Source of the DNA: Gracilinanus agilis
Taxonomy: Eukaryota
Assembly (NCBI RefSeq): GCF_016433145.1
Contig: NC_058133.1
Location: 456,890,928-456,951,594 of the forward strand
DNA: 60,667 nucleotides
Reading direction: 5' to 3'
Shown here: positions 4,001 through 4,087 of the stretch, in pieces
How the letters are laid out: every line of letters begins with the position of its first letter
Numbering within the stretch: the stretch's first letter is position 1
The notes under the pieces: generated by a model
Told to the model about the DNA's origin: nothing
Seen by the model: only the letters and a program-made list of their open reading frames with translations
The model's database searches: none
Position numbers and translations under genes: made by a program

Positions 4001-4087
4001 CTGACCAGAAAGGAGTGGAAGAAGGGGGAACAAAGCTGTAGTCTGGAGGAGGAGTTACAAAAGAAAACCCACAGAACAAAGAAGGGG
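4001..4087 (-). CDS. VAV3: VAV3 alternative cassette exon, 87 nt, phase 1-1: (S)PSLFCGFSFVTPPPDYSFVPPSSTPFWS(V)
   Basis: Long polypyrimidine tract cttctctctttttctttctttttttcctctaag|, donor TCAG|gtactg. Length is divisible by 3, there is no stop, and the phase matches the flanking exons. It resembles the insert I recall in a human VAV3 isoform and the VAV2 insert ending PFWSV. Confidence 0.88.

What the first reader, a model, noticed from the sequence alone, without database searches (positions are those of the whole stretch)
4001..4087. Hidden in-frame 87-nt cassette exon between the SH2- and cSH3-coding exons of VAV3
Seen: it lies 14.3 kb downstream of exon 25 and 2.3 kb upstream of exon 26, with a strong polypyrimidine tract plus AG, a GT donor, phase 1-1 and 29 codons without a stop. 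Inclusion changes ...SSN-LLSPK to ...SSN-SPSLFCGFSFVTPPPDYSFVPPSSTPFWSV-LSPK. Recalled knowledge: a minor human VAV3 isoform carries a nearly identical insert with PP instead of PPP, and VAV2 has an alternative insert at the same position ending PFWSV. Inference: this is an ancient regulated exon predating the VAV2/VAV3 duplication and kept since the marsupial-placental split. The Vav cSH3 contributes to autoinhibition, so a 29-residue longer SH2-cSH3 linker could retune GEF activity.
Basis: partly seen in the sequence, partly recalled or inferred. Interest (0 to 1): 0.75.

Follow-up and report, generated by a model that had tools for sequence, protein, structure and literature searches.

The report
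Conserved alternative VAV3 linker exon
The 87-base stretch is a genuine alternative coding exon of the signalling gene VAV3, conserved from sharks to mammals, that adds a flexible 29-residue piece between two domains; public gene models of other species already include it, and its function is untested.

Summary
On the minus strand, 4087..4001 is an open 87-nt phase 1-1 exon with an AG acceptor, a 100% pyrimidine tract and a GT donor. It lies between the VAV3 SH2-end exon and the first C-terminal SH3 exon.

The open frame alone proves nothing: the intron holds 352 such candidates. Comparison with other species settles it.
- A homologue lies in the same intron in fulmar, python and four teleosts, with AG and GT at the same bounds.
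- Exon lengths are 81, 84 or 87 nt, always a multiple of three.
- pN/pS is 0.07-0.33 in diverged pairs.
- Opossum versus bird is 98.8% identical over the exon, against 79-80% for the neighbouring exons. About 60 nt of each flanking intron is also conserved.

Named gene models (passerine, colugo, bichir, medaka, cyprinid, catshark) carry the insert spliced exactly as predicted. VAV2 proteins carry a homologous insert. Two VAV1 loci lack it. AlphaFold predicts the insert to be disordered.

Function is inferred only.

The parts
4001..4087 (-). Alternative cassette exon of VAV3: 87 nt, phase 1-1, 29 added residues.
   Evidence: Read and translated. Homologues lie in the same intron in fulmar, python and four teleosts. 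pN/pS is 0.07-0.33. Named models splice it in.
4088..4150 (-). Conserved upstream intronic flank. It contains the AG acceptor (4089-4088) and a CU-rich pyrimidine tract with UCUU/CUCUCU motifs and a YGCY motif.
   Evidence: Sliding identity is 0.63-0.77 opossum-fulmar here and at most about 0.57 beyond. Fish copies also have long CT-rich tracts.
3945..4000 (-). Conserved downstream intronic flank. It begins with the weak donor GTACTG (4000-3995) and has two YGCY motifs.
   Evidence: Three-way identity is 0.83 over 4004-3975 and 0.53 over 3974-3945, then background. The GTAC donor is kept from teleosts to amniotes.
4038..4052 (-). PPPDY inside the exon, a PPxY-type motif. The extra CCT codon that makes this copy 87 nt instead of 84 is also here.
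   Evidence: PPDY in fulmar, passerine and colugo; LPDY in python; PPGY in bichir. The motif is absent from teleost, catshark and VAV2 versions.
18362..18491 (-). Upstream constitutive exon (end of SH2 and start of the linker). It ends in phase 1.
   Evidence: PDB hits are to VAV2/VAV1 SH2 ends. tblastn with VAV3 proteins confirms it.
1551..1702 (-). Downstream constitutive exon (start of the C-terminal SH3).
   Evidence: Pfam SH3_1 at 1.4e-10. PDB hits are to VAV SH3. Best named relatives are VAV3 at 92-94% identity.

Best explanation
Window 4087..4001 (minus strand) is a genuine, evolutionarily old alternative coding cassette exon of VAV3.

**What it does to the protein.** When included, it replaces the junction codon and adds 29 residues to the linker between the SH2 domain and the C-terminal SH3. 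These residues are proline- and aromatic-rich and are predicted to be disordered.

**How inclusion is probably controlled (inferred).** The exon has a conserved weak GTAC donor, a long CU-rich tract and about 60 nt of conserved intron on each side. That is the anatomy of a regulated exon rather than a constitutive one.

**Evolution.** The exon arose before VAV2 and VAV3 separated. VAV2 keeps a homologous 29-residue insert. The two VAV1 loci examined do not have one.

**Likely function (inferred).** The insert acts as a flexible linker extension carrying short linear motifs. The family-wide core is a repeated [FY]-S-F-hydrophobic-(x)-P-P pattern ending in PFWS. Tetrapod VAV3 additionally has a PPxY motif. 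Such an insert could recruit partners, or alter how the CSH3 folds back on the DH-PH core.

**Shown:** anatomy, conservation, purifying selection, and spliced models in other species.
**Inferred:** use of the exon in this animal, how it is regulated, and its biochemical effect.
For: - **Anatomy and frame:**
- **Gene identity (VAV3):**
- **Same intron, same AG/GT bounds** in fulmar L001, python L002 and Sinocyclocheilus L003, and in Coilia, Arctogadus and Metynnis.
- **Frame kept:** exon lengths are 81, 84 or 87 nt.
- **Coding constraint:** pN/pS is 0.07-0.33, with Fisher p down to 1e-5, in fish-fish and fish-amniote pairs.
- **Nucleotide-level freeze:** the cassette is 98.8% (opossum-fulmar) and 95.1% (opossum-python) identical, with 15 of 16 and 13 of 15 fourfold sites unchanged. 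Exons 25 and 26 are 77-82% identical, with 4 of 14 to 7 of 10 fourfold sites unchanged between opossum and either species.
- **Spliced models with the insert:** P0118, P0121, P0122, P0099, P0123, P0068, P0087 and P0172.
- **Skip forms are also common,** for example P0111-P0117 and P0051.
- **VAV2 insert:** P0144 and P0146 are 81-92% identical to P0150, which matches VAV2 structures.
- **VAV1 lacks it:**
- **Not a repeat:** no copy elsewhere in the window.
- **Disordered:** pLDDT is below 50 over the linker and insert.
Against: - No transcript evidence from this animal.
- None of the Logan-derived spliced VAV3 fragments retrieved carries the insert. Only curated or predicted gene models do. VAV3 inclusion may therefore be rare or tissue-restricted, and some models may be homology projections.
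- The donor is weak.
- Frozen synonymous sites in amniotes could reflect a non-coding function overlapping the exon.
- The PPxY motif is not conserved outside tetrapods and bichir, so it cannot explain the exon's family-wide conservation.
- No stable RNA structure (z = +0.6) and no RBFOX site were found. The regulator is unknown.
Confidence: 0.9

Rival explanations
1. The exon is real in other vertebrates but is no longer used in this lineage. It would be a relic that still looks intact.
For: There are no junction reads for this animal. This copy alone has an extra CCT codon. The donor is weak.
Against: An unused exon would have decayed. Instead the copy is 98.8% identical to the bird copy, with intact AG, GT and frame and conserved intron flanks. 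The surrounding intron is at background identity. The extra codon keeps the frame.
Confidence: 0.05
2. The block is mainly a conserved non-coding element, such as an intronic enhancer, a splicing regulator of neighbouring exons or a small RNA. It only happens to be open and to be picked up by gene predictors.
For: Synonymous sites and about 60 nt of each flank are frozen across amniotes, which is more than coding constraint needs.
Against: Conservation stops within about 60 nt of the AG and GT bounds. Indels are always multiples of three. Where bases have changed, changes are strongly synonymous-biased. VAV2 proteins assembled from sequencing runs, with no introns, contain the homologous insert. 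There is no stable RNA fold. An overlapping regulatory layer on top of coding is still possible.
Confidence: 0.04
3. It is a chance pseudo-exon: a random open AG..GT stretch behind a pyrimidine run.
For: The same intron holds 352 open phase 1-1 candidates.
Against: Cross-species conservation, purifying selection and spliced annotated models argue against it.
Confidence: 0.01

Closest known systems
VAV2 long-linker isoforms (29-residue insert between SH2 and CSH3)
   Same: Same junction and same phase. The core motifs are recognisably homologous and the ending before the SH3 exon is the same. Forms with and without the insert both exist (P0144 and P0146 versus P0141 and P0150).
   Different: It is a different paralogue. 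The VAV2 version lacks the tyrosine and the PPxY motif. Its N-terminal half is divergent.
VAV3 insert-bearing gene models in other vertebrates
   Same: The models are P0118 (Passeriformes), P0123 (Galeopterus), P0121 (Erpetoichthys), P0122 (Oryzias) and P0099 (Sinocyclocheilus isoform X1). They carry the orthologous exon with the same junctions. The bird peptide is identical except for one proline.
   Different: The window copy is 87 nt, against 84 nt in bird, snake and colugo and 81 nt in teleosts. It is not known whether this genome's own annotation lists the exon.
Deeply conserved, tissue-regulated alternative exons with conserved flanking introns
   Same: Shared features are a frame-preserving cassette, a weak splice site, conserved intron of about 60 nt on each side, and suppressed synonymous change.
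   Different: No regulator or tissue pattern has been shown here.
Zebrafish vav2 15-nt neuronal microexon (PMC12626424)
   Same: It is an alternative exon in a Vav gene. Its inclusion raised activity about threefold in an SRF reporter assay, which offers a ready assay design.
   Different: It is a different exon. It lies near the RhoGEF domain, is 15 nt long and is SRRM3/4-dependent.

Membership tests
VAV3 gene (Vav family Rho GEF) | The flanking exons encode the end of the Vav SH2 domain and the start of the C-terminal SH3, and are closest to VAV3. | tested here: met
   PDB hits are to VAV SH2 and SH3 chains. Pfam SH3_1 matches. The best named relatives of exon 26 are VAV3 at 92-94% identity. 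VAV3 proteins map onto four exons of the window.
Conserved alternative coding cassette exon | Splice sites and reading frame are kept at the same bounds across species. | tested here: met
   AG and GT are at homologous bounds in seven genomes. Lengths are 81, 84 or 87 nt.
Conserved alternative coding cassette exon | Purifying selection acts on the encoded peptide. | tested here: met
   pN/pS is 0.07-0.33 with Fisher p down to 1e-5. The pairs are not independent.
Conserved alternative coding cassette exon | Both included and skipped forms exist as spliced products. | tested here: met
   Included: P0118, P0121, P0122, P0099 and P0123. Skipped: P0111-P0117, P0051 and others. Most are gene models. 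For VAV2 both forms also occur in run-derived assemblies.
Conserved alternative coding cassette exon | Inclusion junctions are seen in RNA of this species. | not testable with these tools
PPxY (WW-domain ligand) motif | A P-P-x-Y motif is present and conserved wherever the exon is conserved. | tested here: inconclusive
   Present here and in bird and colugo (PPDY) and in bichir (PPGY). Python has LPDY. It is absent from teleost, catshark and VAV2 versions. Binding was not tested.
Poison (NMD-triggering) exon | Inclusion introduces a stop codon or a frameshift. | tested here: not met
   The exon is 87 nt, has no stop, and restores the frame into the SH3 exon.
Exonised transposable element | The exon lies within a repeated element. 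| tested here: not met
   There is no second copy in the 60.7-kb window. The exon predates the split of cartilaginous and bony fishes.

The most novel reading that the evidence does not exclude
The near-total freeze of exon and flanks across amniotes could mark a tightly controlled switch exon. On this reading its tetrapod product gains a working PPxY docking site, for example for NEDD4-type ligases or other WW proteins. That would give a VAV3 isoform with its own turnover, localisation or release from CSH3-mediated autoinhibition, a regulatory layer of Vav signalling that has not been described.
Probability: 0.15. Interest if true: 0.6.

Novelty: already known. Interest (0 to 1): 0.35.

Why it matters
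Vav proteins are central Rho/Rac exchange factors, and their activity depends on the CSH3 folding back on the catalytic core. A 2014 review states that nothing is known about the signalling specificity of Vav splice isoforms (PMC4601183). This exon has been kept for the whole history of jawed vertebrates in both VAV2 and VAV3. In amniotes it is conserved at the nucleotide level far beyond its constitutive neighbours, so it almost certainly does something. It is therefore a well-defined and easily testable candidate for isoform-specific Vav regulation. It is not a newly discovered exon.

Tried and rejected
- That ruled out an Rfam scan, DNA pattern searches, and paper or findings searches by sequence. 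I worked from the flanking exons, from database proteins and in local scripts.
- **The phmmer job.** It returned only short ORFs read straight through genomic DNA (P0001-P0003, P0005, P0006) and one chance repeat protein (P0004).
- **P0001 and P0002.** They are near-identical to the cassette and of unknown, possibly human, origin. I did not look them up. I also did not look up the contigs of the unnamed VAV2 proteins.
- **Failed look-ups.** P0113 and P0112 are not on record. No DNA was served for the catshark locus.
- **RNA structure** was rejected as the reason for frozen synonymous sites (z = +0.6). No RBFOX site was found.
- **Transposon origin** was rejected.
- **Literature.** Five searches found no paper on this exon.
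- **Joined opossum protein.** I never built it. Exons were searched one by one by reference, and the named bird isoform P0118 was folded instead.
- **Third word search.** I ran no further search on naming VAV2 species.

Full report
**1. The observation.**
- Reading the minus strand confirms every stated feature.
- AG is at 4089-4088 and follows a tract that is 100% pyrimidine from -23 to -4.
- The exon runs 4087..4001 (87 nt). The donor is CAG|GTACTG, which is weak because it lacks G at +5.
- The upstream exon ends at 18362 with one spare base. The downstream exon starts at 1702.
- The distances are 14,274 nt and 2,298 nt.
- Translating the three pieces by reference reproduces the stated peptide and both junction contexts.
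- The frame alone is weak evidence. The 16,659-nt intron holds 352 open phase 1-1 AG..GT candidates, though only two independent acceptors have a strong pyrimidine tract.

**2. Gene identity.**
- The flanking exons match the Vav SH2 end and C-terminal SH3 in solved structures and Pfam SH3_1.
- I ran a word search with the stop-free ORF around the SH3 exon, scored on the exon part only.
- The best named hits were VAV3 of beaver, hamster, bat, coelacanth and fishes, at up to 94% identity.
- VAV3 proteins also map to exons at 47518-47601 and 29209-29421.

- Pfam left the cassette peptide open.
- The word search cannot reach full-length Vav proteins from a 31-residue query, because of its length filter.
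- I therefore handed the cassette ORF to the exhaustive phmmer search.
- I then asked for RNA runs holding 4001-4087.
I collected the earlier job by ticket only.
- All later searches used the flanking exons or insert-free database proteins. All comparisons involving the cassette were done in local scripts.
- I did not look up P0001 or P0002, which are near-identical and possibly human, or the contigs of the unnamed VAV2 proteins. No human contig was fetched.
- I never built the joined opossum protein.
That fits the deep nucleotide conservation shown below. I treat it as a lead, not a measurement.

**4. Relatives of the cassette.**
- The phmmer search returned five short ORFs called straight through genomic DNA of other organisms.
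- In each, similarity begins at the acceptor and ends at the donor read through as G-T. One further hit was a chance repeat protein.
- The searches beside the cassette were more informative (local scans).
- Named models that carry the insert spliced at exactly the predicted junctions:
  - P0118 (UniRef VAV3, Passeriformes; identical peptide except one proline fewer)
  - P0123 (RefSeq VAV3-like, the placental Galeopterus)
  - P0121 (bichir vav3a) and P0122 (Oryzias VAV3)
  - P0099 (RefSeq VAV3-like isoform X1, Sinocyclocheilus)
  - P0068 (Arctogadus) and P0087 (Coilia)
  - P0172 (a Scyliorhinus canicula model, spliced to its SH3 exon)
- Two further models carry the insert without a clean SH3 junction. 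P0162 (Scyliorhinus torazame) is a partial model that ends inside the insert. P0133 (Cynoglossus vav3b) is more divergent and uses a shifted donor.
- Many more VAV3 models and run-derived fragments skip the insert, for example P0111-P0117, P0051, P0028 and P0047.
- No run-derived VAV3 fragment retrieved carried the insert, so inclusion may be minor or tissue-restricted.

**5. VAV2 and VAV1.**
- P0150 (sea snake) is VAV2 by its match to solved VAV2 SH2 and SH3 chains.
- P0144 and P0146 are 81-92% identical to P0150 and only 53-58% identical to VAV3. P0171 is 88% identical to P0150 over its SH3 region.
- P0144 and P0146 carry a 29-residue insert at the same junction, with homologous core motifs and the same ending. 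P0171 holds the C-terminal part of that insert spliced to the SH3 exon. P0141 and P0150 are the skip forms.
- None of the nine VAV1 models that span the linker has an insert.
- In pigeon and paddlefish VAV1 loci the equivalent intron is only 741 nt and 203 nt.
- A local profile of the insert, built from database proteins only, finds nothing there (at most 7.8 bits). It scores 52-58 bits in the VAV3 loci.

**6. DNA-level test.**
- The public fulmar and python models skip the exon. It nevertheless sits intact in their SH2-CSH3 intron, with AG and GT at the same bounds.
- Four teleost loci show the same anatomy: a long CT-rich tract, an AG acceptor, an 81-nt exon and a GTAC donor.
- Identity with the window's copy:

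| Region | Opossum-fulmar | Opossum-python |
|---|---|---|
| Cassette, nucleotide identity | 98.8% | 95.1% |
| Cassette, fourfold sites unchanged | 15 of 16 | 13 of 15 |
| SH2-end exon (18363-18491), nucleotide identity | 79.8% | 82.2% |
| SH2-end exon, fourfold sites unchanged | 7 of 10 | 7 of 11 |
| SH3 exon (1551-1700), nucleotide identity | 78.7% | 77.3% |
| SH3 exon, fourfold sites unchanged | 4 of 14 | 6 of 14 |

- The conserved block spans roughly 4150..3945. That is the exon plus about 60 nt of intron on each side. Identity then falls to background.
- Where substitutions have accumulated (fish-fish and fish-amniote pairs), they are strongly synonymous-biased. pN/pS is 0.07-0.33 with Fisher p down to 1e-5. 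The pairs share branches, so the p-values are not independent.
- Lengths of 81, 84 and 87 nt keep the frame.
- Together these results show selection on the peptide. In amniotes a further constraint acts on the RNA or DNA itself.
- That extra constraint is not a stable fold (z = +0.6). The likeliest explanation is dense splicing control, which is an inference.
- UCUU/CUCUCU motifs lie upstream, and YGCY motifs lie at 4122, 3996 and 3965. There is no UGCAUG.

**7. The peptide.**
- I folded the bird isoform P0118 with a 36-row alignment.
- The three domains are confident. The whole linker with the insert (residues 174-217) has pLDDT below 50.
- The insert therefore behaves as a disordered segment carrying short motifs.
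- The family-wide core is a repeated aromatic-S-F-hydrophobic-(x)-P-P pattern ending in PFWS.
- The PPxY motif at 4052..4038 is limited to tetrapod VAV3 and bichir, with LPDY in python. It cannot be the ancestral reason for conservation, but it may be a tetrapod addition.

**8. Mechanism.**
- Shown: a regulated-looking, frame-preserving cassette that lengthens the SH2-CSH3 linker by 29 disordered residues.
- Inferred: the CSH3 contacts the DH and PH domains in the closed state (PMC4601183). The insert could therefore change how the protein closes, or add a docking site.
- My rough split is about 50% partner-docking motif and 30% linker-length or autoinhibition effect. The rest is both or something else.
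- No paper in the searchable library addresses this exon.

**9. Verdict.**
- It is already present in public gene models, so it is known rather than hidden.
- Its use in this animal and its function remain untested.

Noticed in passing
window 28573-28728 and 36554-36705: Two runs of N, 156 and 152 bases long, are each about exon-sized. They lie in the part of the gene between mapped VAV3 exons where SH2-coding exons would be expected. I treated them as masked on purpose and neither filled nor searched them.
   Followed up: no
window 4042-4044: An internal CAG sits behind the pyrimidine-rich first half of the exon. It could act as an alternative acceptor at 4042 and give a 42-nt, still phase 1-1, short form of the cassette.
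   Followed up: no
L001:25535-25618 and L002:83137-83220: The public fulmar and python VAV3 gene models (P0111, P0117) skip the cassette. It is nevertheless intact in their intron with AG and GT, so this is an annotation gap in those records.
   Followed up: yes
L003-L006, just downstream of the fish cassette: Teleost copies have a tandem donor, GTACAG|GTAC or GTACTG|GTAC. Using the second GT would add two residues (G-T), as in the Cynoglossus vav3b model P0133.
   Followed up: partly
window 4047-4052: This copy has one extra CCT codon (PPP instead of PP). The exon is therefore 87 nt here, 84 nt in bird, snake and colugo, and 81 nt in teleosts.
   Followed up: yes
window 16450-16506: This is the only other candidate in the intron with a strong pyrimidine tract. 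It is 57 nt, open, phase 1-1, with a poor AAT|GTCTCC donor. I did not check it for conservation.
   Followed up: no
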